Below, piece by piece: positions 56 through 52,102 of a DNA stretch of 64,000 nt; the first letter of the stretch is position 1, and every line of letters begins with the position of its first letter. The position numbers and the translations under genes were made by a program. The notes below the pieces were generated by a model. The model worked only from the letters and a program-made list of their open reading frames with translations. It was not told the origin of the DNA and did not search any database. Where the stretch lies: the IMG/VR virus record IMGVR_UViG_3300033233_000001, positions 186,001-250,000 of that record; one strand, given 5' to 3'.

Positions 56-126
56 TCGTCGCGCCGAGAGTCGCACTCGGGTCTTCCGCGTGTCGGGCGG
101 GTACTCTTCTGTTGAGCTACGCGACG
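56..126 (-). tRNA. tRNA-Val(GAC), atypical T-loop
   Basis: Cloverleaf: acceptor CGTCGCG/CGCGACG, anticodon loop CC-GAC-AC, T-loop TGCGACT. Confidence 0.75.
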
Positions 127-198
127 TTGGTCCAGACTGATTGCGATGGCCATCGCTGCTCGGCCCAAGCCGGCCGACACGGAACGAGCCCAGCTGGA

Positions 199-270
199 TC
201 GGCGCAGGTGGAATCGGACCACCAACTCAACCTTATCAGGGTTGCGTTAAGACCACTTAACTATGCGCCG
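199..270 (-). tRNA. tRNA-Ile(GAT)
   Basis: Acceptor CGGCGCA/TGCGCCG; anticodon stem CAACC/GGTTG, loop CT-GAT-AA; T-loop TCCGATT. Confidence 0.85.
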
Positions 271-273
271 CGA

Positions 274-346
274 CGTCCTCGACAAGAATCGAACTTGTGG
301 CCTGCTTTTTAGGAAAAAGCTGCTCTTCCAGCTGAGCTACGAGGAC
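274..346 (-). tRNA. tRNA-Arg(CCT)
   Basis: GTCCTCG acceptor, TAGCTCAG D arm, loop TT-CCT-AA, TTCGATT T-loop. Confidence 0.9.
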
Positions 347-353
347 AATAAGG

Positions 354-426
354 GTGACCAGGGGGACATCGAACCCCTCATCCTCCGGACCACAACCGGA
401 TGCTCTACCTTTGAGCTATGGCCACC
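354..426 (-). tRNA. tRNA-His(GTG)
   Basis: GGTGGCCA start (G-1), loop TT-GTG-GT, GGTTCGA T arm. Confidence 0.9.
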
Positions 427-434
427 ATGAACCA

Positions 435-507
435 TGGAGTTAGCCGGGATCGAACCGGCGACCTCTTGAGTGCGATTCAAGCGCTCTCCCAGCTGAGCTA
501 TAACCCC
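435..507 (-). tRNA. tRNA-Ala(CGC)
   Basis: GGGGTTATAGCTCAGCTGGGAGAGC, G3:U70 pair, loop AT-CGC-AC. Confidence 0.92.
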
Positions 508-597
508 TCTTTCATTAAGACTGCGACGATCGAAGTGTTCCTCAGTCTTAGTTTTGCCGCATTTAGGACAGCGCTTTGTCCTCATCTTCAACCTCAT
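508..597 (-). pseudogene. Relic N-terminus of a Zn-finger (CxxC) endonuclease-type gene
   Basis: AT-rich spacer reading MRLKMRTKRCPKCGKTKTEEHF, then running into tRNA-Ala. Confidence 0.45.
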
Positions 598-618
598 CGG
601 GGTGCCCTCACCCAGTTA

Positions 619-692
619 CGCCCCCACGGGGAATTGAACCCCGCTCGACCCTGCTTGACAAGCAGGCGTCCACGCCAGTGGACTTTGGAGGC
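619..692 (-). tRNA. tRNA-Asp(GTC)
   Basis: Anticodon stem CCTGC/GCAGG, loop TT-GTC-AA, GGTTCAATTCC T arm. Confidence 0.88.
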
Positions 693-820
693 ATTGGTGT
701 GGCGGGTCCTACTCAGCGCGGACGCTGAGCCTTCGGTACCAAGGTGGACCTCACCACGATCACGCCGAGAGCTACCCGGCATGACTCGACGCAACACGGA
801 GAGCTACTCCGCCTTGGCCG
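693..820 (-). ncRNA. Candidate structured RNA between tRNA-Phe and tRNA-Asp
   Basis: Several adjacent hairpins, two with TAGCT loops; CCAAGG/CCTTGG closing helix; folded by eye. Confidence 0.35.
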
Positions 821-821
821 A

Positions 822-894
822 TGGGACGCCCTGGAGTCGAACCAGGTTCCGCGGCTTTTCAGACCGCTGCAATGACCGCACTTGCTCACGTCCC
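822..894 (-). tRNA. tRNA-Phe(GAA)
   Basis: GGGACG acceptor, loop CT-GAA-AA, GGTTCGACTCC. Confidence 0.88.
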
Positions 895-898
895 GTGA

Positions 899-969
899 CA
901 GGCCAGGCAGGCGTCGAACCTGCTCGACGCGCGATTTGGAGTCGCGCCGGCTACCTCAGCCTCTGACCT
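899..969 (-). tRNA. tRNA-Trp(CCA)
   Basis: AGGTCAG/CTGGCCT acceptor, loop CT-CCA-AA. Confidence 0.85.
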
Positions 970-974
970 AAGGA

Positions 975-1258
975 CTCCTGGGGCTGGAATCGAACCAGCG
1001 ACCACTCGGTTACGTACCACTTCGGCTTTCGCCGCCCGCAGGCGCGGTTCGTGGTCTGGACTATCCCATCGTCCTCGACTTGCAGTCGGTCGGACGTCGC
1101 CCCTCTAGTCTCTACACCTTCCCCCGAGGGGGCTTGGCTCGGGATTGCCACGTCTCTTGCGACGAGGGTTCCCCGAGTTTGGGCGATTTTCACCGGCCGA
1201 TTACTCGGTCGGGCTGCCAACGGACAGCCGAGCGCTCTTCCATCTGAGCTACCCAGGA
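975..1258 (-). tRNA. tRNA-Asn(GTT), split by an intron (exons 1258-1224 and 1012-975)
   Basis: Joined exons give CTCGG-CT GTT AA-CCGAG anticodon arm and TCCTGGG/CCCAGGA acceptor. Confidence 0.92.
1013..1223 (-). ncRNA. Group I intron (211 nt, IC3-like, no ORF) in the tRNA-Asn anticodon
   Basis: U.G at P1 (GGCTGT/GCAGCC); core elements AAACTCGGGGAA, AATCCCGAGCCAAG, GTGTAGAGACT, GATAGTCC; terminal G. Confidence 0.92.
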
Positions 1259-1300
1259 ATGTGGCTGGCGCCCGATGGCGCCAGCCGTCTTCTTCGGTTC

Positions 1301-1319
1301 CTATTCAGTTTTCAAAGAG
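1301..1319 (-). promoter_or_regulatory. rrn-type boxA antitermination-like element
   Basis: CTCTTTGAAAACTGAATAG on the tRNA-coding strand, upstream of tRNA-Asn. Confidence 0.6.
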
Positions 1320-1339
1320 GCCGCCGTGAAGCGGCTTCA

Positions 1340-1412
1340 TTCCGGGTCGAGGACTCGAACCTACGATTTTCTGAGTCAGAGTCAGACGGCCTGCCGATTA
1401 GCCGAACCCGGA
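1340..1412 (-). tRNA. tRNA-Gln(CTG)
   Basis: TCCGGGT acceptor, loop CT-CTG-AC, GGTTCGAGTCC. Confidence 0.9.
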
Positions 1413-1485
1413 TGGGATGGACGGGACTCGAACCCGCTTAGGCCGATGTAAGAAACCGGTGTAGTTCCTGATCTACATCCATCCC
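1413..1485 (-). tRNA. tRNA-Lys(CTT)
   Basis: GGGATGG/CCATCCC acceptor, loop TT-CTT-AC; unusual D arm. Confidence 0.75.
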
Positions 1486-1494
1486 GAAAAACCA

Positions 1495-1566
1495 TGGGAG
1501 CGACGGGGGTCGAACCCGCGACCGTCCAGTTAAAAGCTGGCTGATCTACCTCTGATCTACGCTCCC
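1495..1566 (-). tRNA. tRNA-Lys(TTT)
   Basis: GGGAGCG acceptor, loop CT-TTT-AA, GGTTCGACCCC. Confidence 0.88.
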
Positions 1567-1570
1567 GCTT

Positions 1571-1765
1571 TCACGCGGCAGCGCGTTTCTCCTCTCGTCC
1601 CTCGACGCCCAGCACGGTGCGCCGATCTGCTCCCGACATGAGCAGCCACAGGCCGTCGACTTCGTCCTGAAGCCGATCGACCTCGTCCTCTCCGCCGCGG
1701 GCGCGCGCAGCCCGAAGCCGCTCGCGCGCCAGCCGGTACCTCTCCACGATGTGCACGGTAGTCAT
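1571..1765 (-). CDS. Hypothetical protein (64 aa) inside the tRNA array
   Basis: ORF fills the gap between tRNA-Tyr and tRNA-Lys. Confidence 0.5.
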   Translation of the reverse strand: MTTVHIVERYRLARERLRAARARGGEDEVDRLQDEVDGLWLLMSGADRRTVLGVEGREEKRAAA

Positions 1766-1778
1766 GATCTTTCTCGAT

Positions 1779-1858
1779 TGGAGCCGGAGGGAATTGAACC
1801 CCCTGTGCCGTGAGGCGCCCGGTCTACAGCCGGGTGGGGACCATTCCCCATCGACTCC
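1779..1858 (-). tRNA. tRNA-Tyr(GTA)
   Basis: Loop CT-GTA-GA, long variable arm, GGTTCAATTCC. Confidence 0.88.
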
Positions 1859-2177
1859 AGAAATGCGAAGAGGGCGCTCGGTTTCCCGCGCGCCCTCGTA
1901 GTTTCTGGATGGTGGTCCGTACTTACGAGGGCGATCTGGGCTTCCGATTCTGGTGCGCGTAGAAGCCCGTCCAGGCGCACACGACTCCGCGATCGCAACC
2001 GCGGAGCGGCAGCGACATCGGGAGCATGGCGATGGAGGTTTTTGTCACGGAGGGCGGTTTCTCGTTCAGCGGGGAGTTATCCCCAGGTTCTCGTATGTCT
2101 GACATGCCGCTGGCAGGCGGGTCAAGAAGAAAAACGACAGGCAAGAAAAATCGTCGGAGACGCACCTACACACCGCA

Positions 2178-28616: not shown

Positions 28617-29675
28617 TTATTTTGGAACGGCCCGAACCTTCTCTGGCCTCTCCACGTCGCAGGTTGCCTCGTTCACCATCGAGAGCGACCTGCCGAACCT
28701 CTTCGCGATCTCCCGACACGGTACGCCTGACCCTGCCAGCGATCGCCACTCGTCTACTTCGGAACGCGGAACTCGTTTCTCCATGGGGAAGCGCGGTTTC
28801 GTAACCAGACCAAGCTCTTCTGTCGATCTGTTCGATGTCGGAACGATGTCTTTGACGACCGCATGCACTACCGAGTTAGCACGCCCGTAATGCCTTCCGA
28901 TCGCCACGATCGACGCACCATCTGTCCTGAGCCTTCGCCACTCTTCTTGGATCTCGTCCGTCAGTCCCGAGTTGACACCCGACCAGAATGACGACTCTCC
29001 TCCAGCTGCCCGGCGACCAGTCTTAGGTTGAAAGCCAGAGTCGAGAAGCGCCTTCCACTTGAGCGACCGAAGCCATTCCCCAATCGCCGCGACGTGGGCC
29101 TGACGATCGACGATGACGTAGTTCATCTCTTTCTGAGACGGCGGCGCCGAGATACGCGCGCTCCACCCTCTCGCCCTCAGAGCGCGGCGCACCCACCCGA
29201 TCAAAACGCCTGGCTTCTGAGCGAAGCCGAACTGCGCGCCATTGCTCGCGGACCGCTTCTCTGTCTTTCTAAGAAACCAGCCGTCCGTTTCGACCAGCGA
29301 CTTCAGGAAGAGCCTTGTGCACTCTTCGTCGTCATCCACCCACCGTGGCGGCGGTACCATCAGCTTATCGGCACCAGCACCGATGTACTTGTGAGCGACG
29401 CCGAAGTCGCCAATCACGTCATGCGTCGTCCAGTAGATCTCGAAGAAGTCACCGAACTCCTCGGTAAGCGCCTTCATGTGCTTCTGGTACACGTGGTACC
29501 CACCGTAGACGAGCGTGAACAGTTCTTTCACGCGCATCAGCCATGCTGGGTACTTATCGCCTACGGTGACGGCCACCTTCCAGCTTTGCTTGCCGCGCTG
29601 CTGGATGTAGCCGTCACCGAAGACGGCGCCCAAGAGTTCCGCTTTATACCCGTTCACGCACCGCTCGCTTGACAT
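28617..29675 (-). CDS. Free-standing two-motif LAGLIDADG homing endonuclease with C-terminal HTH-like repeats
   Basis: LLGAVFGDGYI and FLKSLVETDGWF; lower GC3; two HTH-like segments. Confidence 0.85.
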   Translation of the reverse strand: MSSERCVNGYKAELLGAVFGDGYIQQRGKQSWKVAVTVGDKYPAWLMRVKELFTLVYGGYHVYQKHMKALTEEFGDFFEIYWTTHDVIGDFGVAHKYIGAGADKLMVPPPRWVDDDEECTRLFLKSLVETDGWFLRKTEKRSASNGAQFGFAQKPGVLIGWVRRALRARGWSARISAPPSQKEMNYVIVDRQAHVAAIGEWLRSLKWKALLDSGFQPKTGRRAAGGESSFWSGVNSGLTDEIQEEWRRLRTDGASIVAIGRHYGRANSVVHAVVKDIVPTSNRSTEELGLVTKPRFPMEKRVPRSEVDEWRSLAGSGVPCREIAKRFGRSLSMVNEATCDVERPEKVRAVPK

Positions 29676-29737: not shown

Positions 29738-31280
29738 CTACAAAACGTCCCTTGAATGAATGCCATCGAGCACGTACTTGATGTCCTTCTCGATGTCGTC
29801 CTCGCCGGGAACCGAGAGGCCCGTGCCCGTCGCGATGCCGGTCGTGAGACCGGAGCCGGTGATGATCGCGTTCGGGCTGTTGTTCGGCACGAGGCCGTTC
29901 AGCTGCTCGATGACGCTCGCGCCGGGCGTCTGCCCGATCGGCGAAGCGATCGCGATGACCTGGAAGCCCTGACGCGGCGGGATGAGAATCGGCCTCGCCA
30001 GACGCATCAGCGCGGACGACGTCGGAACGCCGTTGTTCGCGCGCGGGAGACGGCTGTCCGAGAAGAAGCCATCGAGACCACCCGCCATCGGGGTGTACGC
30101 CGTGAACGTGGTCAGCTGCGGCTTGTCGCCCGCCACCATCTGCCAGAAGAACTGGTTCTGGCTCTGGTGGTAGAGCTTGTGCACGCGCATGATACGGTCG
30201 GGGAACACACCGTCGACCGAGCCGATCGGCTGGGCTCCCGGAGTCGGCTGTGCGATCACGACCGGTGCTTCCGGGTTGAACCGGAAGTACGTCCAGACGC
30301 GCACCGCGAGGGTGATGTACGTCTGGTCGGACGGGAAGAAGCCACCCGTCGTCAGGTTCGACACCGAGATGTCGGCGCCCTGACGAACGAACAGCTGCGC
30401 GCGGTTCGGGACTGCCCCGAACACGCCCTGGTTGGTGTTGCGGAGGTCCACGTCACCGTCGACTCGGATGAGCGAATCGTAGACTTCAGTTACGCCAGAA
30501 GTTTACTCTGGCTCTCCGGATTTCTCCGGAGTGTCGGACTATATCACCAACCGTCAGTTGACGGTCGCCGGGCGCTCTTGGGTCGGATTATCGTTGGAAC
30601 TCACCGACCTAGTCTCTACACCTTCTACCGGCACATCAGCCATTCGATGTCCACCGATAGCTTGGCTCGGGATTACCTCGCGGAGAATCGCTTCTACCTC
30701 CACAGGGGCTTCCCCGCCGTTTCGCTTGATGACCGCCATGGTATCTAGGACAACAGCGTCTAGCTTCGTCTGTCGATACATGCGCACCAAGCAGGCGCGT
30801 GTCAGGAACCAGTCAACGACCTCTGCCTCTGTCTTCTTGGCTGTGAGGTGCGGCAGCAAGATCCTAGTGATCTTGAGCACGTCGTCTTTGCGTGCGACGT
30901 GCAACCAATACTGCCAGCGGGTCGCCTTCTTGCCCTTCCACACGCGACGGATTGGCTGGTGATGCACACCAACGTCCGTCAGGATCCGACTCACTCGATC
31001 GACCATCGCTTTCGAGGTGTTGCAGATGACTAGCCACAGCTGGTAGCTCGTCTTCTTTCCCTTGGCCTTCCCGCTCTTGCGGACGATCGGGCGCTTCACT
31101 GCGAAGCATCCCTCTCCATCCACAATCCCGGCCAGCCAGGCGACGTCGGTCTCGTTCATCTTCTCCTTCTACCACGAAACGGTTTGATTCACCCAGTTGT
31201 TCACCGCTGAGTTACCTCAGCGGGCCGCCCTACTTCGACGGCTGATGAACGCGCTCACGGGTACCTACGATCTTGGGCAT
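29738..31280 (-). CDS. Putative major capsid protein, vertical jelly-roll type, 262 aa after splicing (exons 31280-31238, 30483-29738)
   Basis: Spliced frame MPKIVGTRERVHQP-F-YDSL; LF...SNL...G.FPSDQ; NNGVP..L.RPI.IP; LDG..SRDV; strong RBS. Confidence 0.65.
30484..31237 (-). mobile_element. Group I intron (754 nt) in the capsid gene
   Basis: P1 GCCGT/GCGGC; P3 CTGGGTG/CGCCCGG; AATCCCGAGCCAAG, GTGTAGAGACT, GATATAGTCC; ends in G; removal restores frame. Confidence 0.92.
30554..31159 (-). CDS. Intron-encoded single-motif LAGLIDADG endonuclease
   Basis: VAWLAGIVDGEGCF; own AGAGGAG RBS. Confidence 0.92.
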   Translation of the reverse strand: MNETDVAWLAGIVDGEGCFAVKRPIVRKSGKAKGKKTSYQLWLVICNTSKAMVDRVSRILTDVGVHHQPIRRVWKGKKATRWQYWLHVARKDDVLKITRILLPHLTAKKTEAEVVDWFLTRACLVRMYRQTKLDAVVLDTMAVIKRNGGEAPVEVEAILREVIPSQAIGGHRMADVPVEGVETRSVSSNDNPTQERPATVN

Positions 31281-31495: not shown

Positions 31496-32104
31496 TCAGC
31501 TTCCAGCGAATAGGTTGCGTGCGTAGAGACCGCCCGCATAGCCACGGCCGTCCGCGGCCGCGAACGGTTCACGTACCCGTCTGATCTGCTTTTGGAACGT
31601 CGCTGGCAGTGCGAGGTCCATCGGGATGACGGTCGAGACCGCCGGAGGCTGCATCGGACCACCGAGTCCGAGCATCCCCTGGTATGGCGCGCCATAGTGG
31701 GCGACATCCACCATCGGGTCTCCAAACCCAGACACGTTCGACGACGCCGGCATCGCAGCGGCCTGAGCCGGCGTCGCTTGCACCATCGCCATCGCCCGCG
31801 GCAGGTACGGCATGATCGCCGAGATCCCCATGCCAGTCGCGAGAGCCTGACTGACCTCGTCCGACATCCCGATCCCACCGCCCATCACGAGCGCCAAGGC
31901 CCCACCGCCAGCGCCAGTGATCGCCATGAGCATCTTCGGATCCTGCCCTACGAGCAGGCGACCAACCACGTTGTCGCTCAGCCACGAAGCGAGCAACATG
32001 CCGCCCGCGCCGACGAGAGACGGCACGACGAGACGATGGACGATGCCCGTCGTCGGGTCACCCTCTGCGTTTCGGCGCAGCCTCTTGTTTCGGCGCTTGC
32101 TCAT
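31496..32104 (-). CDS. Virion membrane protein with basic leader
   Basis: MSKRRNKRLRRN, several Gly-rich TM helices, ends GRGYAGGLYARNLFAGS. Confidence 0.8.
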   Translation of the reverse strand: MSKRRNKRLRRNAEGDPTTGIVHRLVVPSLVGAGGMLLASWLSDNVVGRLLVGQDPKMLMAITGAGGGALALVMGGGIGMSDEVSQALATGMGISAIMPYLPRAMAMVQATPAQAAAMPASSNVSGFGDPMVDVAHYGAPYQGMLGLGGPMQPPAVSTVIPMDLALPATFQKQIRRVREPFAAADGRGYAGGLYARNLFAGS

Positions 32105-32133: not shown

Positions 32134-34356
32134 TCAGAACATGCCGGCGAAGAGGTTCCGCGCGAAGAGGCCTCCGGCGTAGCCGCGACCTTCGGGGGTC
32201 ACGAGCGACGACGGGATCTTTCGCTCGTACGGCATCTCGCCCGTGATGAGCTTGGCGCCCTCGACCGGCGTCTGGATCGACGCGAACGGGGGCTCCATGC
32301 GACCGCCCTCCGTCATGCTGCCCGGACGAACGAAGTCCGGGTGCTTGCCGTACCAGCCGTCGATGTCCGTCTCCTCGATGTACTCGCCGACGCCGCCGAG
32401 GCCGGCCGCCGCGTAGTACGTCTGACCGACGCCCGCCGCTGCCTCCATCACCGTGTTCCCCGTGGCCTCCATCACGTCCATGAGGCCGTCGACGCCCTCC
32501 TGATTCGCGGGATCGATGCCCTCGTGGTAGCCGGCCGCCGCGTAGTACGTCTCGCGACCGAGTCCGGCCGCGGCGTAGTACGTCTCGCGACCCATGCCGT
32601 GGCTCGGGTCGTCGACGTACGCGCCCAGGCCCTGCATCGGCTGCTCGACGTACTCGCCGAACGCGCCCATCGGCTGCTCAACGTACTCGCCGAGGTACGA
32701 CGCCATGCCAGTGCCGCGGAGTAGACGCGCGATGAGCGCGAGGCCCATGCCGGTCAGCACCGGTGTCGCGTTCTCCGTGATCATCGACATCTTGCCTGCG
32801 CGATGCGCCCAGGCCGAGAGGCCGAGAGCGCCAGCGATGACCGCCGCGTTCACGATGCTCTTCGTGGCGAGCGCCGCATCTGCCGGACGGCCCGCATCGA
32901 GCACGCCGCGGACCTGATCGCTGTTCGCAGCCAGGTTCGACAGCGCATTCGCTGCCAGGAAGCCCGCGGTTGCGTAGCCAGCCGGCATCGCGATGTCCGT
33001 GATCACGTCCTTGCCGTAGAGCTTGAAGAAGTTCCGACGAAGCCGGTGGCGGCGACGGTTCTTCGACATGCCCGTGGTCTGCGGAACGTAGATCGGGTTC
33101 CGGCGCGAATGCCGGCGGCTCTTCTTGCTCTTCCTCTTGCGGCCCATCGAGTGCCTCCTTGCGTTCTTCGTTACGGCCTTCTTCGAGCCGCGTGCCTTCT
33201 TCGACTTGCGTGCCGCCCTACGCGGCTTGCGCGAACGAGCCTTCGCCTGGATCATCCGAGCAAGCTCGGGACCCCACGATCCACGCTTCGAGTGCGCCCG
33301 ACGTGCGACGCCACCGAACGTGAACTTGCGCGTGTAACCCTTCACGCGACGGCCGCCGACCGAGACGGTCGACTTGCGGCTGCTGCCCGGACGGTAGAGC
33401 ACCGTCTGGCGGGCGCCGGTCAGAAAGTTCGGGTGGACGCGACGCGACCGGCGACGGCGGCTGCCGCGACGGCTGTTCCGACGCGAGCGGCGGCGATTGC
33501 CAAAGAGCCCGCGCGACGCACGACGACGACTGTTCCGGCGCGGTCGACGCGAGTGCGCACGACGTGACGTGTTACGGCGTGATCGACGGCGATGGCGGTT
33601 CGCCGCCAACTCGTGGAACAGCGGCGAGCCGTACATGTGATGCGACGAGCGGAACGTCGGCGTACCAGAGACGTGCGACTTGCTCGCGCGCTTCTTCGAC
33701 GAGCGCTTCTTCGAGCCGCCCTTCGACCGGCGCTTCTTCGATGCCTTCTTCTTGCTGGCGGCATTTCGCCGCGAACGACGACGACCGTTGCGACGTGATG
33801 CGCGGCGGCGGCCACCACGACGGCTCGTGTCTCGCCGCGAGCGCCTGCGACCGGCGTTTCGACGACTCCGACGGCGCGCGCTCCGGCGCGACGCGCGACG
33901 GCTGCCTCGGCGGCTCGTGTCCTTCCTCGATGCCCGACGGCGCGTACGCCTGTTCGCCGCGGCCTGCATCAGCGGGTTGCGGCGCGAAGCCTTGCGCGAA
34001 CGGCGACGCTTGCGACCGGCGCCATGGGCGACGACGCTCATCAGTCCGCCACGGTTACGGCGGACCGACGCCGTGCCAGGCGCGTGCGAACGACGCTTGC
34101 GGGAGCCACTCCTCTTCCGCTTGCGGCCAGCGTTGGCACGCATCGCAGCGCGCAGTCCCGGGTAGTTGTACGCCATCGAAACTCTCCTGCGACTAGGGTT
34201 CTTGGATCCGACGAGCGGAGAGCCGTGCGGATGCTTCGGTCGGCCTGGATTCACCACGGCGAGATGCGTTACGCCGCCCGGATTGGGCGCCATGCCCGGC
34301 GTTCGGTCGTACGACCTCGCCGCGCCTTCGCTGCTTCTCCGGTAGATCAAGGCCAC
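32134..34356 (-). CDS. 740-aa Arg/Ser/Lys-rich core-like membrane protein
   Basis: Long RRxRRN-type tract, TM region, YYAAAG repeats, ends GRGYAGGLFARNLFAGMF. Confidence 0.8.
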   Translation of the reverse strand: MALIYRRSSEGAARSYDRTPGMAPNPGGVTHLAVVNPGRPKHPHGSPLVGSKNPSRRRVSMAYNYPGLRAAMRANAGRKRKRSGSRKRRSHAPGTASVRRNRGGLMSVVAHGAGRKRRRSRKASRRNPLMQAAANRRTRRRASRKDTSRRGSRRASRRSARRRSRRNAGRRRSRRDTSRRGGRRRASRRNGRRRSRRNAASKKKASKKRRSKGGSKKRSSKKRASKSHVSGTPTFRSSHHMYGSPLFHELAANRHRRRSRRNTSRRAHSRRPRRNSRRRASRGLFGNRRRSRRNSRRGSRRRRSRRVHPNFLTGARQTVLYRPGSSRKSTVSVGGRRVKGYTRKFTFGGVARRAHSKRGSWGPELARMIQAKARSRKPRRAARKSKKARGSKKAVTKNARRHSMGRKRKSKKSRRHSRRNPIYVPQTTGMSKNRRRHRLRRNFFKLYGKDVITDIAMPAGYATAGFLAANALSNLAANSDQVRGVLDAGRPADAALATKSIVNAAVIAGALGLSAWAHRAGKMSMITENATPVLTGMGLALIARLLRGTGMASYLGEYVEQPMGAFGEYVEQPMQGLGAYVDDPSHGMGRETYYAAAGLGRETYYAAAGYHEGIDPANQEGVDGLMDVMEATGNTVMEAAAGVGQTYYAAAGLGGVGEYIEETDIDGWYGKHPDFVRPGSMTEGGRMEPPFASIQTPVEGAKLITGEMPYERKIPSSLVTPEGRGYAGGLFARNLFAGMF

Positions 34357-35495: not shown

Positions 35496-35837
35496 CTACC
35501 TCCCTCGCCGCGGCTGCGGCGCCTCGTATCCACGAAGCAGCTTCTCGATCTCGTGCAAACGACTGTCCATGCGCTCCATCGTCTCGACCAGATGCTCCGA
35601 CGCGCCTTCGGTCTCGGTCGCGAGGCGCACCTGCTCTTGCAGGGCTTCCGAGAAGTCGTGCGTCGCCGTCAGCAGCGTGTCGCGCACTTCCTTCGCGTCC
35701 TGCACGCGGAGCGCCTGTACCTCGTTCAACTTCTGCGTCTGAAGCCAGGCGTAGCGAGCGAGCGGAACGAGCACGAGCAGGAACACGGCGCCGAATGCGC
35801 CCCACTGCTGCACGATCGCATCGGCCGCTTCAGGCAT
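35496..35837 (-). CDS. Single-TM plus coiled-coil protein (holin-like candidate)
   Basis: QWGAFGAVFLLVLV then coiled coil. Confidence 0.5.
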   Translation of the reverse strand: MPEAADAIVQQWGAFGAVFLLVLVPLARYAWLQTQKLNEVQALRVQDAKEVRDTLLTATHDFSEALQEQVRLATETEGASEHLVETMERMDSRLHEIEKLLRGYEAPQPRRGR

Positions 35838-38290
35838 TACCCATCAATCCCGTCCTTCAGGACCCTTAGCCCGCCACCGCACATGATGGCTAGGAAGCCC
35901 TCGCTTCCGTCCTCCTGCGGCTGCGGCGAATAGATCGCGAGCATCTTCCCGTCCGGCGCACAGAGCAGCCAGCAGTCGCGCGCCGACTTCCGTGAGTCGA
36001 TCTCCTCGAACTCGCCATCGTTCCGGCGAAGCTCGCCTCCGAGATACTTGCCGAGTCGTGTCCATGCCTTCGGGTACGCACGCGGAGGCCGCGTCGTACC
36101 GTTCTTACGCACGTCATTCGGGTCAGCCAGCTGCGCGTTCTCGTAGAACAACACGCCCTTGCCAACCTCGTACGGCTGATCCTCGCTCTTGCCGTGCAGG
36201 TGCTTGTAGTCGATGTCCTTGCCGTCGGCGTACCACTTGTCGGTTCTGTAGCTCACCGACAGCGCATCGCCGATGCAGACGAGACGCGCAGGCGGCTCGT
36301 GCCCGACGTCGACGACCTCAAGCGGCTTCTTCGAGTGGAACGTCTCGTACTTGTCCATCGCGGCGTCGATGTCATGACCGCGAGCGCCGCTGAACCTGTC
36401 CGGATCGACCTCTCGGCCTGCGACGCGCCCCATCACGCCCGGCCCAAGCCTGCGCTCCTCTGTCTCTCCGGTGCGATTCCGCCACAGCGGCTTGCTGATG
36501 CGCTTGGCACCCGGATGCCCGCTCGTGCGCTTGCCGTTTGCCGCCGGTCGGCTCGTGCGCTTGGTGACCAGCGTCCCGTTCGGACGGCTCGTGCGCTTCG
36601 CATCCACCGGCCGGCTCACGCGCTTCGGCGGCCGAGAGCGGCGCTTCTCTTGGATCTGCGCGTTGATCTGGAACCGATCGCCGTCGGACTCGTCGCGCGC
36701 GACCACGCGCGCGATCTCCTCGACCTGCTCGGGACTCGCGTCGGCGCCCTCGGTGTTCACGCGCATCGCGGTCCGCAGATGTGACAGCGGGTTGTTTTCC
36801 ATGGTCGATCCTTCCGGCGGCGCACTGCCGCCAGGCCGCTTCAGCCGGCTCACTCGCTTCTTCTTCGGCTCTTCCGGGCCAACAGGAGTCACACGGCTCA
36901 GTTCGGTTTCCTTCTGGCCCCGGAACTCGCCGTGCTTCTTGATCGTGGCCTTTACCCGTACGTGCTTCCCAGCGGCTTCAGACGGCCGGAAGTCCTCGAA
37001 CGGCCAGCTGGAACCGAACCACTTGAAGGCGTACTTGGCAGCATCGCCGGTGCCACGGAAGGAGCAGAGGTACGTCGTGCCGTAGTTACCCTCGATCGGC
37101 CGCACGCCGAGCATGTCGAGTTCCAGCACGATGCGCTCGTCGACGGTTCCGAAGTGCCCGTCGACTACGTCTCCTCGTACCTTCTCGGCTTCGCGCGCCA
37201 TCGCGCGCTGATATCCGGAAGCCAGGGACGCGACCACGCCTGCGCTCCGACCGGTCACGACGCCTGACAGCAGTGCCTGCCGCACGTTGTAGCCGTAGTC
37301 GGTCAGCGTCGTGACGTCCGCGTCGACGAACTCCTTCGTCGCCCACTCGATCGTACGCTTGGCGGCCTCGTGCTCCTGCGGATCTGGCTGCTGCTTCTTC
37401 GCGACCTCGAACCCGAGTTGTCCCCGGCGGCTGGGCATGCAGATGTCCCAGGCCTCGTCGGCCGTCGAGCGCTTGCCGCCTCCGCTCTCGTACGCCACCG
37501 ATCGCGACACCCAGCCGTACTTCGAGATCACGTGGATGACGACTGCGAGGTACTCCTCGATATCGACAGCCATCGTGAGGCGGCTCGCTCCGCCGCCCAG
37601 GCCCTCCCAGTCCTCCATGCCGCGCGCGAGGTCGAAGATCGCGAACAGCGTTTCAGCAACATCCGCGATTTTCTTCGGGTCACCATGACCGCCCAGGAAG
37701 TCCGTCAGACACGTCCTGCCCACCGCCGCGTACTTACCATCCTCATGCGCGAGCACGAAGACAGTAGCTCGATCCCTCTTGGTCAAGCAGTGATCACACC
37801 GCGTCGGCTCGACTGTGCGGAACTCTGCCGGCAACACCTCGTCGGGCACGACGCGCAGCCAGGGCCCGCCGTGCGCCTGCTCCTCGTCGTAGTCGAGACA
37901 CGCGATGAGCCGCCAACCCTTGAGGCGCGGCTCCTCGCCCGCAACGAGCACGGGTGTCACCTCGCTCTTGATCGTGCGCTTCTGCTCCGTGTACGCGGTG
38001 CCGCCGTACGCGCCTTCGATCGCCTTGAGCGTCGTCGACGGCACGTTCGTGTAGTACGGCTCGCCCTTCTCGAACACGAGCGGCTTCAGCCCGAGGCGCC
38101 GTGTCCGCTTCTGGAGCTTCTCGATCGCGTGCGAGAGCGCCTGTAGCTTCATCGCCGGGATCCAAAACAGCCCGACCTTGTAGCCGCCCGCTTCGAGCGC
38201 AGCTTTCCGCTCGACGAGGCGCGGGTCATCGCGCTTCTCCATCTTGTCGTCGGAGACGTTCGAGCGCAGGGCTGCGGACGTGTAACTCAT
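35837..38290 (-). CDS. 817-aa multidomain protein: MSY leader, Zn/OB-like phage domain, KRTSR repeats, C-terminal domain
   Basis: CDHC...VGRTCL.DFLG; GHFGTV...FKW...KATIKKH; five KR(T/V/I)S repeats. Confidence 0.8.
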   Translation of the reverse strand: MSYTSAALRSNVSDDKMEKRDDPRLVERKAALEAGGYKVGLFWIPAMKLQALSHAIEKLQKRTRRLGLKPLVFEKGEPYYTNVPSTTLKAIEGAYGGTAYTEQKRTIKSEVTPVLVAGEEPRLKGWRLIACLDYDEEQAHGGPWLRVVPDEVLPAEFRTVEPTRCDHCLTKRDRATVFVLAHEDGKYAAVGRTCLTDFLGGHGDPKKIADVAETLFAIFDLARGMEDWEGLGGGASRLTMAVDIEEYLAVVIHVISKYGWVSRSVAYESGGGKRSTADEAWDICMPSRRGQLGFEVAKKQQPDPQEHEAAKRTIEWATKEFVDADVTTLTDYGYNVRQALLSGVVTGRSAGVVASLASGYQRAMAREAEKVRGDVVDGHFGTVDERIVLELDMLGVRPIEGNYGTTYLCSFRGTGDAAKYAFKWFGSSWPFEDFRPSEAAGKHVRVKATIKKHGEFRGQKETELSRVTPVGPEEPKKKRVSRLKRPGGSAPPEGSTMENNPLSHLRTAMRVNTEGADASPEQVEEIARVVARDESDGDRFQINAQIQEKRRSRPPKRVSRPVDAKRTSRPNGTLVTKRTSRPAANGKRTSGHPGAKRISKPLWRNRTGETEERRLGPGVMGRVAGREVDPDRFSGARGHDIDAAMDKYETFHSKKPLEVVDVGHEPPARLVCIGDALSVSYRTDKWYADGKDIDYKHLHGKSEDQPYEVGKGVLFYENAQLADPNDVRKNGTTRPPRAYPKAWTRLGKYLGGELRRNDGEFEEIDSRKSARDCWLLCAPDGKMLAIYSPQPQEDGSEGFLAIMCGGGLRVLKDGIDG

Positions 38291-47185: not shown

Positions 47186-47197
47186 GTCTTCGTCTCC

Positions 47198-47656: not shown

Positions 47657-47658
47657 GA

Positions 47659-48093: not shown

Positions 48094-48103
48094 GCTCGTC
48101 CTC

Positions 48104-50177: not shown

Positions 50178-51005
50178 CTAGGCCTTCCTGCTCGTGCGCT
50201 TGTTACGGCGCGAGGCGCGCCTGCGCCGATTCGGAGTCGACCGCGCGCTCTTGCGCGTCGACATATACCACGCGCCGCCGCCAACTACGACAGCGCCGCC
50301 GATGCCGACGTACAGCCATGGGAACCCGCCACCGACGTTCTGGTTCGCCGTAGTCGGCGTCGACGGCGGCGGCACTAGGTCGCTCGTCGTCACCGGCGCC
50401 TCGGTCCCTGGCACCGGCGAGGTCACGAGATCGACATTCGTCTTCGTCGGCGGTGGCGGCGGCGCGTCCGGCGGTTTCGGCTGCGAGCCGAAAGTCGGCG
50501 TGTACTTCAAGAGCACCGGCGCCTGCTCCTTCGGCGGCGCCAAGAACGTCGACAGCGACTTGTACGCCGTCACGTTGATAGTGCCAGGCGCGGCGACCAG
50601 TCCACCGACAAGATCTGTCGCCAGGCTCTTGTACGTCGCGCCAGGCCAGAACGTCATCAGCGCCTCGTTCAGTCGGCGCTCGCGGTTCGCATTCGTGATC
50701 GCAAGGTCGAGCAGCGCCTTCACCGTGGAGCCCGCCACTACCGTGCCGCCCGTATACGCTCCGGAGGCCAGCCGCGTCATGTCCGTCGGCCTCATGGCAC
50801 GAAGACCGTCGCGCAGAGCCTTGAGCCCAGCCGCGTCTGCTGTCTCGTTGTTGATGGCCGCCATGCCCATGGCGCGGTCGGCCGCCTGCGCGAGCCGATC
50901 GCGATTCAACAGCGGCCAGGAGCCCTGCCCACGACCAGCTACGGGCGAAAACCCGCCGACGACAGCGAAGTCAATCGTTGCGCCAAGATCGTTCGTATAG
51001 CTCAT
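50178..51005 (-). CDS. MSYTNDLGA membrane protein
   Basis: GFPWLY TM; TPNRRRRASRRNKRTSRKA. Confidence 0.8.
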   Translation of the reverse strand: MSYTNDLGATIDFAVVGGFSPVAGRGQGSWPLLNRDRLAQAADRAMGMAAINNETADAAGLKALRDGLRAMRPTDMTRLASGAYTGGTVVAGSTVKALLDLAITNANRERRLNEALMTFWPGATYKSLATDLVGGLVAAPGTINVTAYKSLSTFLAPPKEQAPVLLKYTPTFGSQPKPPDAPPPPPTKTNVDLVTSPVPGTEAPVTTSDLVPPPSTPTTANQNVGGGFPWLYVGIGGAVVVGGGAWYMSTRKSARSTPNRRRRASRRNKRTSRKA

Positions 51006-52102
51006 CGCCGCCCTCTGCTCGTGCGCGTTCGGCGCCTGTTCGGCGTCGGCCCCGGTCGCAGCAACAGATACCCACCGACCGCAACCGCGCCGCCGACTCC
51101 GATGTACATCCACGGGACCCCAAACAGCCCCGCTCGCGGAGCCACCGGCGGCGGCACCAGTTCCTGCGGCGTCGGCGGTACGAGACTGCCTTCAGGCCGC
51201 TCGACCGTCACCTCCGGCGGCGGTGGCGTAACCGTGTTCGCAACGCACACGCCTGTCGCATCACGGTAGTAGCCGTCGTTGCACGCGATCTCCCTCGACC
51301 CCGAGCCCGTCACGTCCTGACCCTGGACCTTGCCCGCGTCGGTCCCGGCCTTCGCGGCCGCTTCGTCGGCGGCGACCTTCGCGGCAGCCGCTTCCGACGC
51401 ACTCTTCGCGTCCTCGGCCGCCTTCGCCGCCGCGGCCGCAGCAGCCGCGTCATCGGCCGACTTCGCAGCCGCAGCAGCTTCCGCGGCGATCCTCGCATCA
51501 GCCGCCGCCTTGGCCGCAGCCGCCGCTTCGGCCTCGGCCTGAGCCTGCGCCGCCGCGCTCGCCTGCTGGCGCTGAAGAGTAGCCAGGGCCGCAGCCAGAT
51601 TCGCCGCGCGCTGACGCAGCCGTTCTGCCGTCGCAGCCGCCTCTGCGGCAGCCTTCCGGCGCGCCGTCTCTGCGGCAGCAGCGGCAACAGCCGGATCGAA
51701 CTCCATGGCCGCGACTCTCGCCATCAGCTTCGGACCGCGAATCTGCCAGTTGATGTAGCCGATCCGCGCGGTGCCGCGGTACCGATCCGAGATCGCTCCC
51801 TTGATGAGATTGACCAGCGCACGCGTGTTGACCAGGCCCGCCGCGTTCACCGCGAGGACTCCGATCCAACTCGCCCCGTTGTTCAAGGCGGTCACGTCCG
51901 ACCGTGCCGTTGTGCCCTCCGTACGAGACCGAAGCGCCGCAGACCGCAGCATCGCAGCCGCCCGCATCGCACGCACGATCTCGTTGCGCTCTGCCGCCGG
52001 ATAGCCCGCACGGTAATCGACCCTGCCGGGCAGAACCGACTTGCTACTGAGTCCGGTGGGCGCGAGGTCCAGGCCGGCGCCAAGGTCGTTCGTGTAGCTC
52101 AT
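51002..52102 (-). CDS. MSYTNDLGA membrane protein with Ala-rich coiled stalk
   Basis: Long A/E/K-rich helix; GVPWMY TM. Confidence 0.8.
   Translation of the reverse strand: MSYTNDLGAGLDLAPTGLSSKSVLPGRVDYRAGYPAAERNEIVRAMRAAAMLRSAALRSRTEGTTARSDVTALNNGASWIGVLAVNAAGLVNTRALVNLIKGAISDRYRGTARIGYINWQIRGPKLMARVAAMEFDPAVAAAAAETARRKAAAEAAATAERLRQRAANLAAALATLQRQQASAAAQAQAEAEAAAAAKAAADARIAAEAAAAAKSADDAAAAAAAAKAAEDAKSASEAAAAKVAADEAAAKAGTDAGKVQGQDVTGSGSREIACNDGYYRDATGVCVANTVTPPPPEVTVERPEGSLVPPTPQELVPPPVAPRAGLFGVPWMYIGVGGAVAVGGYLLLRPGPTPNRRRTRTSRGRR

What the first reader, a model, noticed from the sequence alone, without database searches (positions are those of the whole stretch)
30484..31237. Group I intron with LAGLIDADG endonuclease interrupting the capsid gene at codon 15
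Seen: exact splicing (CAGCCGT|TCTAC) restores the frame and the QPFYDS motif, giving 789 nt. The ORF track misses exon 1. The endonuclease ORF appears looped out between P3 and P4 by an extra helix (CCGTTTCG/CGAAACGG), and its last codons run through the ribozyme core to 30554. Established: phage group I introns mostly sit in DNA-metabolism genes, with fewer cases in structural genes. Inference: capsid synthesis depends on splicing, and the J3/4 insertion site is unusual.
Basis: partly seen in the sequence, partly recalled or inferred. Interest (0 to 1): 0.65.

Follow-up and report, generated by a model that had tools for sequence, protein, structure and literature searches.

The report
Mobile group I intron in jelly-roll gene
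A 754-base self-splicing-type (group I) intron carrying its own homing-endonuclease gene splits codon 15 of a highly conserved jelly-roll protein gene in a 298-kb uncultivated phage; the intron call is sound and of a known kind, but the "capsid" label for the host gene is not proven.

Summary
On the minus strand, exon 1 (31280..31238) reads MPKIVGTRERVHQP plus one T. A 754-nt insert follows (31237..30484), then exon 2 (30483..29738). Joining them gives 789 nt.

- **Junction:** dozens of intron-less homologs begin MPKIVGTRERVHQPFYDSLIRVDG, exactly the predicted join.
- **Intron anatomy:** U·G at the 5' site, a terminal G, an adjacent P10/P1 guide, P2-P9.1 and a P7.1 hairpin.
- **Covariation:** eleven related introns from metagenomes include ORF-less and ORF-remnant copies at the same site, and copies at two other sites of the same gene. 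They give 26 compensatory pairs of 65, and P1, P10, P3 and the extra helix also covary.
- **Endonuclease:** the ORF (31159..30554) is a single-motif I-CreI/I-MsoI-type LAGLIDADG enzyme. It sits in the loop of a hairpin between P3 and P4. Its last 54 codons run through P4-P8 and stop in the P8 loop.
- **Weaknesses:** Rfam scores are below threshold (23-37 bits against 50), and no RNA data exist.
- **Host gene:** it has a jelly-roll fold with no Pfam or PHROG match. Its best structural match is a viral capsid protein at Z 7.4, which is not decisive.

This is a new member of a known kind, with an uncommon but not unprecedented ORF position.

The parts
31238..31280 (-). Exon 1 of the host gene: ATG plus 13 codons plus the first base of codon 15 (MPKIVGTRERVHQP + T). 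The last five bases, GCCGU (31242..31238), form the 5' strand of P1.
   Evidence: Translation. It is identical to the N-terminus of the intron-less homologs P0003-P0108. P1 pairing is shown.
30484..31237 (-). Group I intron, 754 nt. The first base is C31237 and the last base is G30484 (omega-G).
   Evidence: Boundaries come from the intron-less homologs and from ORF-less and ORF-remnant introns at the same site. Rfam RF00028 gives 23.2 bits.
31224..31233 (-). Internal guide sequence. GUAGG (31233..31229) pairs with the start of exon 2, UCUAC, to form P10. GCGGC (31228..31224) pairs with the end of exon 1, GCCGU, to form P1, with U.G at the splice site.
   Evidence: P10 changes with the exon in relatives: CCAGG:UCUGG, UGAAGG:UCUUCG, ACAU:AUGU, GUCG:CGAC. 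P1 changes at the other insertion sites (AGACGU/GCGUCU).
31204..31223 (-). P2 hairpin CCGCUGAG-GUAA-CUCAGCGG.
   Evidence: Read from the sequence. Recovered by the MFE fold of the L003 intron. Relatives carry other sequences that still pair, for example CUGACGCA/UGCGUCAG and UUGUCAGG/CCUGACAA.
31190..31196 (-). P3 5' strand CUGGGUG. It pairs with CGCCCGG (30574..30568) and forms a pseudoknot with P7.
   Evidence: Relatives show CCGGGUG/UGCCCGG, CUGGGUG/UGCCCAG, UCGGGUG/UGCCCGA and CGGGGUG/CGCCCCG. The MFE fold of L003 recovers it.
31175..31189 (-). Conserved joiner AAUCAAA (31189..31183) followed by the 5' strand of the extra helix, CCGUUUCG (31182..31175).
   Evidence: The helix covaries: CCGUAGCG/CGCAACGG, CUGUUGCG/CGCAACGG, CUACAACG/CGUUGUGG, CAACCG/CGGUUG, AUGCGA/UCGCAU.
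30554..31159 (-). Intron ORF of 201 aa: a single-motif LAGLIDADG homing endonuclease (WLAGIVDGEGCF). A Shine-Dalgarno-like AAGGAG lies at 31167..31162. The stop TGA (30556..30554) is in the P8 loop. The last 54 codons overlap P4-P8.
   Evidence: The profile matches I-MsoI, I-CvuI and I-CreI over positions 3-145. About 99 homolog clusters of the same length were found.
30717..30724 (-). 3' strand of the extra helix, CGAAACGG. It also encodes ..KRNG.. of the ORF and directly abuts P4.
30620..30716 (-). P4-P6 domain. P4 is 30716..30712 with 30672..30668. P5 is 30709..30698 with 30685..30675. P6 is 30666..30664 with 30622..30620. P6a is 30660..30654 with 30631..30625. P6b is 30649..30645 with 30638..30634.
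   Evidence: RNAalifold consensus of 11 introns, with compensatory changes in P5, P6a and P6b. The core motif GGUAAUCCCGAGCCAAG aligns to the Rfam model.
30537..30616 (-). Catalytic core.
- P7 5' strand GAGACUA (30616..30610, with a bulged A).
- P7.1 hairpin GGUCGG...CCGACC (30609..30581).
- P3 3' strand CGCCCGG (30574..30568).
- P8 ACCGUCA-AC-UGACGGU (30565..30550).
- J8/7 UGGUGA (30549..30544).
- P7 3' strand UAUAGUC (30543..30537).
   Evidence: P8 shows compensatory changes. P7 and P7.1 are invariant, partly because a 20-mer covering them was the search probe.
30484..30531 (-). P9 CUCCGGA-GAAA-UCCGGAG (30531..30514), P9.1 CCAGA...UCUGG (30511..30495), and the 3' tail ending in G30484.
   Evidence: P9 and P9.1 have several compensatory pairs and the GAAA loop is invariant.
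29738..30483 (-). Exon 2 of the host gene: the last two bases of codon 15, then YDSLIRVDG... to the stop. The spliced product is 262 aa with a predicted jelly-roll fold.

Best explanation
The 754-nt insert is a mobile group I intron.

**Splicing (inferred).** After transcription of the minus strand, the intron's guide sequence pairs with the last bases of exon 1 (P1, with U.G at the cleavage site). It then pairs with the first bases of exon 2 (P10). The core (P3-P9, with a P7.1 hairpin as in subgroup IA introns) binds guanosine and carries out the two transesterifications. This joins ...CAGCCGU to UCUACGA..., restoring Phe15 and a 262-aa jelly-roll protein.

**Homing (inferred).** The intron carries a 201-aa single-motif (I-CreI/I-MsoI-like, presumably homodimeric) LAGLIDADG homing endonuclease. 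The gene sits in the loop of an extra hairpin between P3 and P4. During co-infection the enzyme would cut intron-less alleles near the CAGCC(G/C)T|TCTACGA site, and repair would copy the intron in.

**ORF overlap (inferred).** The ORF's last 54 codons are read through P4-P8 and end in the P8 loop. A ribosome on the ORF and a folded ribozyme therefore cannot occupy the same RNA at once.

**Shown here:** anatomy, exact junction, covariation, presence/absence polymorphism and ORF decay series.
**Inferred:** splicing itself, endonuclease activity, and any coupling of translation to folding.
For: 1. **Junction.** Intron-less homologs at 70-94% identity all start MPKIVGTRERVHQPFYDSLIRVDG.
2. **Same site, smaller introns.** L003 has a 321-nt ORF-less intron. 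L004/L005/L006 have a 381-nt intron with an ORF remnant, a deletion derivative of the L027 ORF.
3. **Core covariation.** RNAalifold on 11 cores gives 65 pairs, 26 with both sides changed. It recovers P4, P5, P6/6a/6b, P7, P7.1, P8, P9 and P9.1.
4. **Guide and peripheral covariation.** P1, P10, P3 and the extra helix all pair in 11 of 11 introns. Their sequences track the local exon at three different insertion sites.
5. **Independent fold.** The MFE fold of the ORF-less intron recovers the same helices, z = -5.0.
6. **Rfam.** Hits align the conserved J4/5-P6 and J6/7-P7 motifs (GGUAAUCCCGAGCCAAG, GUAGAGACUA, GAUAUAGUC).
7. **P1 codon.** All 10 intron-bearing alleles at this site use Pro CCG, which completes P1. 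Of 17 intron-less alleles, 12 use CCC.
8. **Endonuclease.** The HEG profile matches I-MsoI at 1e-7 and I-CvuI at 7.5e-7 over the whole nuclease domain. D14-G15-E16-G17 are invariant.
9. **Spread.** About 99 intact homolog clusters were found, and an intron-bearing allele at about 90% identity occurs in an unrelated wetland metagenome.
Against: - There is no RNA evidence. No RNA run holds this DNA, so splicing is inferred.
- Rfam scores are below the gathering threshold (23.2 bits here, 26-37 in relatives, against 50).
- The window ORF is just under Pfam's LAGLIDADG_3 cutoff (19.7 against 22.5 bits).
- The relatives were fetched with a 20-mer from P7/P7.1. They are therefore a close family, and those two helices cannot vary in the sample.
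- Many sequences share ancestry, so compensatory counts overstate the number of independent events.
- An inserted hairpin right at J3/4, which normally makes base triples with P4/P6, might impair folding.
Confidence: 0.88

Rival explanations
1. The insert is a dead or non-splicing relic, or a free-standing endonuclease gene that landed in the 5' end of the gene. The functional product would then be the 237-aa protein that starts at GTG 30451, as the gene caller annotated.
For: - The database entry for this genome (P0002, 237 aa) and five relatives of 240 aa are called that way.
- Rfam scores are below threshold.
- There are no RNA data.
Against: - The 240-aa calls are themselves intron-bearing genes with the same exon 1 upstream.
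- Exon 1 is kept intact and identical at the protein level in every intron-bearing copy.
- P1 and P10 follow the exon sequences, and the core covaries.
- Residues 1-24 are nearly invariant. They form the first beta strands of the fold at pLDDT 80-94.
Confidence: 0.05
2. The intron splices, but its ORF no longer acts as a homing endonuclease. It could be inactive, or act mainly as a maturase that helps the ribozyme fold, as described for some LAGLIDADG proteins.
For: [quoted passage not shown]
- The hairpin at J3/4 and the long ORF/core overlap could make folding protein-dependent.
- ORF-less and degenerate copies exist, so ORF loss is tolerated.
Against: - The ORF is intact. Its motif acidic residues (D14, E16) are invariant across nine divergent copies.
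- About 99 full-length homolog clusters exist.
- Related introns occupy three different sites of the gene, each with a matching guide sequence. Together with a patchy presence/absence pattern, this is the signature of ongoing mobility.
Confidence: 0.1
3. The insert is another kind of intervening element: an intein, a group II intron or a translational bypass element.
For: The genome does carry LAGLIDADG inteins in three other genes.
Against: - Read-through from exon 1 stops after two codons (TAG at 31231..31229).
- There are no Hint or intein domains in the ORF.
- There is no reverse transcriptase and no group II match in Rfam.
- The insert has every group I hallmark.
Confidence: 0.01

Closest known systems
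Mobile group I introns of phages with an internal homing-endonuclease gene (T4 td/I-TevI, SPO1 DNA polymerase/I-HmuI, Twort orf142); reviewed in PMC3984707
   Same: A self-splicing-type group I ribozyme with a P7.1 hairpin between P7 and P3', as in subgroup IA phage introns. The ORF is looped out of the fold and partly overlaps core sequence. It sits in a highly conserved gene and is patchily distributed among close relatives.
   Different: Phage intron endonucleases are mostly GIY-YIG, HNH, PD-(D/E)xK or EDxHD (PMC3984707). This one is an I-CreI-type LAGLIDADG enzyme. The ORF sits in a hairpin between P3 and P4 rather than in a P2, P6, P8 or P9 loop (the usual positions are from my own knowledge). 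There is only one extra hairpin between P7 and P3', with no P7.2.
Introns in phage capsid genes: mycobacteriophage LittleE major capsid gene, lactococcal phage Tuc2009 (PMC3706429)
   Same: A probable group I intron with an endonuclease gene interrupts a highly expressed virion gene of a phage of high-GC hosts. The 5' exon ends in U and the intron ends in G.
   Different: LittleE's host gene is a proven HK97-fold capsid subunit, its endonuclease is an HNH enzyme on the opposite strand, and splicing was shown by RT-PCR and N-terminal sequencing. Here the host gene's role is unproven, the enzyme is LAGLIDADG on the same strand, and splicing is inferred.
Intron- and intein-rich jumbo phages (Jug phages, PMC12880540)
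   Same: A huge phage genome in which essential genes are split by group I introns, homing endonucleases (a few of them LAGLIDADG) and inteins. This genome also has a tRNA intron and three LAGLIDADG inteins.
   Different: Jug introns average about 206 nt and most endonucleases there are stand-alone genes. This is a different lineage: 65% GC, from sediment and wetland samples. Only two group I hits were found in this genome.
I-CreI / I-MsoI / I-CvuI homodimeric LAGLIDADG endonucleases of algal chloroplast rRNA introns
   Same: A single LAGLIDADG motif near the N-terminus and a domain of about 140 residues. The profile match spans the whole domain.
   Different: About 55 extra C-terminal residues are encoded by the ribozyme core. 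The host is a phage protein-coding gene, not rDNA. Sequence identity is low and Pfam thresholds are not reached.
[quoted passage not shown]
   Same: Extra sequence is accommodated between P3 and P4 of a group I intron.
   Different: In aI5beta the insertion is not described there as an endonuclease ORF in a covarying hairpin, and the introns are unrelated.

Membership tests
Group I intron (Rfam RF00028) | The 5' exon ends in U, which is wobble-paired to G of an internal guide sequence (P1). | tested here: met
   GCCGU|/GCGGC with U31238.G31228. The pairing holds in 11 of 11 relatives and changes with the exon at the two other sites.
Group I intron (Rfam RF00028) | The intron ends in G (omega-G), and the 3' exon pairs with the guide next to P1 (P10). 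| tested here: met
   G30484. P10 is GUAGG:UCUAC, directly 5' of the P1 strand, and it covaries with exon 2 in relatives.
Group I intron (Rfam RF00028) | A conserved core of P3-P9 with the P3/P7 pseudoknot, supported by covariation. | tested here: met
   RNAalifold gives 65 pairs, 26 compensatory. P3 covaries. The MFE fold of the ORF-less copy has z = -5.0.
Group I intron (Rfam RF00028) | The score reaches the curated gathering threshold of the covariance model (50 bits). | tested here: not met
   23.2 bits in the window, 26.1 for L003 and 37.3 for L004. The model lacks P7 and penalises the large insertion between P3 and P4. E-values are 0.006 to 2e-6.
Group I intron (Rfam RF00028) | Guanosine-dependent splicing, or a spliced RNA junction. 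| not testable with these tools
   No RNA run holds this DNA. Contigs of DNA runs show only the intron-bearing form at 85% identity or more.
Subgroup IA group I introns | Extra pairings P7.1 and P7.2 between P7 and the 3' strand of P3. | tested here: inconclusive
   One hairpin (GGUCGG...CCGACC, 30609..30581) is present and invariant. No second hairpin was seen. No subgroup-specific models were available.
LAGLIDADG homing endonuclease (single-motif, I-CreI type) | A LAGLIDADG helix with a conserved acidic residue, followed by the alpha-beta-beta-alpha-beta-beta-alpha core domain. | tested here: met
   The motif is WLAGIVDGEGCF, with D14, G15, E16 and G17 invariant in nine copies. The profile matches I-MsoI at 1e-7, I-CvuI at 7.5e-7 and I-CreI over positions 3-145.
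LAGLIDADG homing endonuclease (single-motif, I-CreI type) | The Pfam family gathering score. | tested here: not met
   LAGLIDADG_3 gives 19.7 bits against a cutoff of 22.5 for the window ORF. Six of nine family members match it, all weakly (best E = 8e-4).
LAGLIDADG homing endonuclease (single-motif, I-CreI type) | Site-specific cleavage of the intron-less allele. | not testable with these tools
   This needs expression of the protein and a cleavage assay.
Mobile (homing) intron | Presence/absence polymorphism at one exact site among close homologs, with ORF-less and degenerate derivatives. | tested here: met
   Intron-less P0003 is 94% identical to the host protein. There is an ORF-less copy (L003) and an ORF-remnant copy (L004). 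Related introns occupy two further sites of the gene.
Phage or virus major capsid protein | Sequence membership in a known capsid family. | tested here: not met
   No Pfam, PHROG, NCBIfam or PDB sequence match. No hit in 50,697 phage records.
Phage or virus major capsid protein | A capsid-type fold (HK97 or jelly roll) with a convincing structural match. | tested here: inconclusive
   The AlphaFold model (pLDDT 77.5, pTM 0.80) is a jelly roll. Its best solved match is the SPV1 major capsid protein at Z 7.4, 133 residues, rmsd 3.3. Other jelly rolls follow at Z 5-6, including non-capsid ones. Homologs carry domain insertions in one loop, as surface proteins often do.
Phage or virus major capsid protein | Presence in virions as the main shell protein. 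| not testable with these tools
   The virus is uncultivated and no proteomic data exist.

The most novel reading that the evidence does not exclude
The interrupted gene could be the single-jelly-roll major capsid protein of a lineage of very large (about 110-300 kb) bacterial viruses that do not build an HK97-type tailed particle.

For this reading:
- The protein's nearest solved fold is the SPV1 capsid protein.
- Some relatives carry two tandem paralogs, as viruses with two jelly-roll coat proteins do.
- Six-frame searches of the whole 298-kb genome found no HK97 capsid, T4-type capsid, large terminase (four families), portal or tail sheath.

The intron family would then be a parasite of the coat gene of an undescribed virus group.

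Against this reading:
- The structural match is weak.
- The Pfam searches are insensitive for divergent jumbo phages.
- Contigs carrying the family are mostly labelled Uroviricota.
- No FtsK-type packaging ATPase was found either.
Probability: 0.06. Interest if true: 0.9.

Novelty: new member of a known kind. Interest (0 to 1): 0.42.

Why it matters
- **Annotation.** The database protein for this gene, and for at least five related clusters, is a truncated 237-240-aa call that lacks the invariant first 22-25 residues. Gene callers also miss exon 1 in every intron-bearing relative.
- **A natural series for study.** The family offers full ORF, ORF remnant and ORF-less copies, plus three insertion sites with matching guide sequences. 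It could serve to study the homing cycle and how a ribozyme tolerates a hairpin with a 600-nt loop at the P3/P4 joiner and 54 codons translated through its core.
- **Reagents.** It adds I-CreI-type LAGLIDADG enzymes, useful as rare-cutting reagents, from phage protein-coding genes.
- **Limits.** It does not change the picture of what group I introns do. Introns in phage virion genes and intron-rich jumbo phages are already published.

Tried and rejected
**Rfam and fold attempts**
- Rfam at gathering threshold on the whole window found only tRNAs.
- AlphaFold on the shallow alignment A1 failed (pLDDT 36). The diverse alignment A2 was needed.

**Naming the host protein**
- Pfam, PHROGs, NCBIfam and PDB sequence searches with a single sequence and with profiles found nothing.
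- megablast and tblastn against phage records, with the host protein and two distant relatives, found nothing.
- ESM Atlas by fold and by features returned only unnamed viral clusters.

**Looking for virion hallmark genes in the genome**
- Phage_capsid, Gp23, Terminase_6N, Terminase_6C, TerL_ATPase, Terminase_3, Phage_portal, Phage_sheath_1 and FtsK_SpoIIIE were all blank.
- The Tunturi_5 tail sheath used as a query was blank.
- PHROGs and Pfam on 30 window ORFs gave almost nothing.
- A blank here does not show absence.

**Context and relatives**
- The neighbouring 311-aa gene is not a detectable paralog of the host gene.
- The 817-aa neighbour resembles a RecT-like gene of jumbo phages and is not a structural gene.
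- A scan of viral contigs with the 20-mer found nothing, because the window's own record is left out.

**RNA evidence**
- No RNA run holds the stretch.
- DNA contigs laid on it showed no intron-less form at 85% identity or more.

**Literature on the ORF position**
- I found only a listing of an optional 'P3.1' pairing, without its place (PMC3873408).
- I also found the aI5beta insertion (PMC2396411) and a remark that endonuclease genes may lie in junctions (PMC2238919).
- I could not establish how rare an ORF at this position is.

**Left out on purpose**
- The joined (spliced) coding sequence or protein was never sent to any tool. Exon 2 was searched by reference, and the natural intron-less homolog P0003 (94% identical) stood in for folds and profiles.
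Full report
**Setting.** The window is bases 186001-250000 of a 297,749-bp IMG/VR virus record (about 65% GC, estimated 90% complete) from a sediment metagenome. Nearly all genes in the window lie on the minus strand. The finding concerns that strand.

**Observation.**
- The minus strand reads ATG (31280) CCC AAG ATC GTA GGT ACC CGT GAG CGC GTT CAT CAG CCG T, ending at 31238, followed by CGAAGTAGGGCGG....
- Reading on in frame gives TCG AAG TAG, so the frame closes after two codons.
- At 30483 the sequence TC TAC GAT TCG CTC ATC CGA GTC GAC GGT... opens a frame that runs to the stop at 29738.
- Exon lengths are 43 + 746 = 789 nt. The split codon T|TC is Phe15.
- The ORF table shows only a 237-aa GTG ORF from 30451, and the 201-aa ORF 31159..30554 inside the gap.
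- Every coordinate and string in the finding is therefore correct.

**The junction is right.**
- A protein search with exon 2 alone, given by reference, found 246 relatives.
- Those of about 260 aa all begin MPKIVGTRERVHQPFYDSLIRVDG, which is exon 1 plus F plus exon 2.
- In a 28-sequence alignment, positions 1-10, 12-19, 21, 23 and 24 are invariant.
- The relatives of 240 aa that begin MDGS... are not shorter proteins. Their contigs show the same exon 1, then an insert, then TCTACGATTCG.
- In L003 the insert is 321 nt with no endonuclease ORF. In L004, L005 and L006 it is 381 nt with a remnant of the ORF found intact in L027.
- Together these give the full homing-cycle series at one site: empty, full, decaying and ORF-less.

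**A family of related introns.**
- A scan of metagenome contigs with a 20-mer from P7/P7.1 gave 13 loci, one of which is the window's own contig.
- The introns fall at three sites of homologous genes.
  - Site A lies after HQP+T. It holds the window, L003, L004, L027, L037 and L038. It also holds L026, L031, L032 and L034, which sit in relatives whose exon 2 reads WDTLIR, WDSLIR or FDSLVR.
  - Site B lies after ..DTLVR (L028 = L033 = L035).
  - Site C lies inside SDQT-Y-VILAMRCW (L029).
- Each intron carries a LAGLIDADG ORF at the same structural place.

**Anatomy and covariation.**
- RNAalifold on the 11 distinct 3' parts (P4 to the end, all given by reference) predicts 65 pairs, 26 of them with both sides changed.
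- The helices are P4, P5, P6, P6a, P6b, P7 (with a bulged base), a hairpin between P7 and the 3' strand of P3 (P7.1), P8, P9 with an invariant GAAA loop, and P9.1.
- A script tabulated the 5' elements.
  - P1 is GCCGU/GCGGC here, CCGU/GCGG in several relatives and AGACGU/GCGUCU at site C. It always has U.G at the cut.
  - P10 lies directly 5' of the P1 strand and follows exon 2: GUAGG:UCUAC, CCAGG:UCUGG, CUAGG:UCUGG, UGAAGG:UCUUCG, ACAU:AUGU and GUCG:CGAC.
  - P3 is CUGGGUG/CGCCCGG here, with CCGGGUG/UGCCCGG, CUGGGUG/UGCCCAG, UCGGGUG/UGCCCGA and CGGGGUG/CGCCCCG elsewhere.
- The MFE fold of the ORF-less L003 intron finds P2, P3, the extra hairpin, P4-P6, P7.1, P8, P9 and P9.1 on its own. Its z-score is -5.0 against shuffles.
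- All ten site-A intron-bearing alleles have the Pro codon CCG, which completes P1. Twelve of 17 intron-less alleles have CCC. The sequences are related, so this is supportive rather than a formal test.
- The Rfam group I model hits the region at 23.2 bits (E = 0.006 in 3.4 kb, 1.2e-4 genome-wide). It hits the smaller relatives at 26.1 and 37.3 bits. All are under the 50-bit gathering score.
- That model omits P7 and has to absorb a large insertion between P3 and P4. The aligned motifs (GGUAAUCCCGAGCCAAG, GUAGAGACUA, GAUAUAGUC) are the classic core.

**The extra helix and the ORF.**
- Between the P3 5' strand and P4 lies the conserved AAUCAAA, then CCGUUUCG (31182..31175). Its partner CGAAACGG (30724..30717) abuts P4.
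- The helix is present in all copies and covaries strongly: CCGUAGCG/CGCAACGG, CUGUUGCG/CGCAACGG, CUGUUGCG/CGCAAUGG, CUACAACG/CGUUGUGG, CAACCG/CGGUUG and AUGCGA/UCGCAU.
- In L003 it closes a 7-nt loop.
- The ORF starts at 31159 behind AAGGAG and codes for 201 aa.
- A profile of nine intron ORFs matches I-MsoI (1e-7), I-CvuI (7.5e-7) and I-CreI over positions 3-145. That is the whole single-motif domain. D14, G15, E16 and G17 are invariant.
- Pfam LAGLIDADG_3 is just under its cutoff (19.7 against 22.5 bits).
- Residues from about 146 onward (NGGEAP..LREVIPSQA..EGVETRSVSSNDNPT..) are encoded by P4 through P8. The stop TGA is in the P8 loop (30556..30554).
- Their conservation follows that of the RNA: conserved over P4, P5, P7 and P7.1, and variable over P6a/b and P8. 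I read this tail as dictated by the ribozyme, which is an inference.
- A search with the ORF found 99 clusters of about 200-215 aa, all unnamed, on contigs up to 138 kb.
- Within this genome the family is single-copy (nhmmer).

**Direct evidence of splicing is lacking.**
- No public RNA run holds the stretch.
- Contigs of four DNA runs were laid on 1,701 bases. One wetland run has an intron-bearing allele at about 90% identity, and none shows a joined form.

**What the host gene is.**
- No sequence library names it, and no cultured phage has it.
- With a diverse alignment headed by the natural intron-less homolog P0003, AlphaFold gives a jelly roll (pLDDT 77.5, pTM 0.80). The N-terminal strands 8-12 and 15-22 have pLDDT 80-94.
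- Foldseek and VIA-align put viral jelly-roll coat proteins first. SPV1 leads at probability 0.98 and Z 7.4, with 133 aligned residues at rmsd 3.3. Next come the STIV turret protein, a satellite-virus coat, HHIV-2, HCIV-1 and P23-77 VP17 at Z 5-5.7.
- Non-capsid jelly rolls score alike, and Z 7-8 is the usual best score for unmatched models.
- Some homologs carry an Ice_binding-like beta-helix or another roughly 90-aa insert in the loop near residue 155. That suggests an exposed loop.
- One contig has two tandem paralogs.
- Neighbouring genes give no help. There is a 740-aa Arg-rich protein, a RecT-like gene and many unknowns.
- 'Capsid' is therefore possible but not shown.

**Known context.**
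- Introns in phage capsid genes are published: LittleE with RT-PCR proof, and Tuc2009 (PMC3706429).
- Jumbo phages full of group I introns, inteins and endonucleases, including a few LAGLIDADG, are also published (PMC12880540).
- Phage intron endonucleases are mostly of other families (PMC3984707).
- An insertion between P3 and P4 is known in yeast aI5beta (PMC2396411). GISSD notes endonuclease genes in junctions (PMC2238919).
- The element is thus a sound new member of a known kind, with an uncommon enzyme type and ORF position for a phage.

- The joined spliced sequence was not sent to any tool. Exons were searched by reference, and a natural intron-less homolog was used for the folds.
- Read laying was given 1,701 letters.

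Noticed in passing
window 975..1258 (-); intron 1013..1223 (-): A second group I intron of 211 nt (Rfam 36.4 bits) splits a tRNA gene in the anticodon loop.
- The 5' exon ends ..CUCGGCUGU and the 3' exon starts UAACCGAG.
- Splicing would give the loop CUGUUAA, which is tRNA-Asn(GUU).
- P1 is GGCUGU/GCAGCC, and the last intron base is G1013.
- ARAGORN and the Rfam tRNA model miss this tRNA.
- It lies in a cluster of 11 other tRNA genes (window 56..1859).
   Followed up: partly
genome G000:C1 87845-91210 (-), 113858-116566 (+), 275251-279627 (+); outside the window (loci L040, L042, L044): Three large genes carry Hint/intein plus LAGLIDADG_3 domains: a UvrD-like helicase, the RtcB RNA ligase and a ResIII/DEAD helicase. 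The genome is therefore rich in LAGLIDADG-type selfish elements of two kinds, introns and inteins.
   Followed up: partly
whole genome G000 (297,749 bp): Six-frame searches found no match to Phage_capsid, Gp23, four terminase families, Phage_portal, Phage_sheath_1 or FtsK_SpoIIIE. Most window ORFs have no Pfam or PHROG match. One has a weak hit to a head maturation protease (51002..52102, E = 7e-4). What kind of virion this virus builds is open.
   Followed up: partly
window 28617..29675 (-): A 352-aa ORF lies just downstream of the host gene. It has an N-terminal LLGAVFGDGYI string and HTH_38/HTH_23-like C-terminal parts. ORFs at the same place in L003-L006 carry faint LAGLIDADG_3 hits. It may be a free-standing endonuclease-like gene next to the intron target. 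It shows no similarity to the intron ORF family.
   Followed up: partly
window 32134..34356 (-) and 31496..32104 (-): A 740-aa protein has a long run of RRRSRRN-like repeats, followed by GRETYYAAAGLG and GEYVEQPM repeats. It shares a C-terminal GRGYAGGL(F/Y)ARNLFAG motif with the 202-aa protein next to it. In relatives (L028, L029, L031, L034) the gene upstream of the host gene also ends in a Gly/Phe-rich tail. Neither protein has a family match.
   Followed up: no
proteins P0122, P0130, P0138 (homologs of the host protein); locus L059 9021-10786: Some homologs have a whole domain inserted in the loop near residue 155. In P0122 it is an Ice_binding-like beta-helix of about 190 aa. One 63-kb contig carries two tandem paralogs of 262 and 261 aa.
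   Followed up: partly
window 31239..31241 (-) and the matching codon in L007-L025: The Pro14 codon is CCG in all ten intron-bearing alleles at this site, but CCC in 12 of 17 intron-less alleles. The G is the second pair of P1. CCC alleles might also be poorer targets for the endonuclease.
   Followed up: partly
genome G000:C1 48536-50179 (-) and 170291-171946 (-); loci L053, L051: There is an IS200-type Y1 transposase domain at the end of a 548-aa ORF, and a Cas12f/TnpB-like TNB domain in a 552-aa ORF. A Ro60/TROVE protein (174278-176161) and a NAMPT-type phosphoribosyltransferase (46608-48212) are also present.
   Followed up: no
window 35837..38290 (-): The first 470 residues of this 817-aa protein match phrog_2319 (4.5e-52). 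They also match unnamed genes of many jumbo phages (KVP40-like Vibrio phages, RsoM2USA). In Tunturiibacter phage Tunturi_5 the matching gene is annotated as a RecT-like annealing protein.
   Followed up: partly
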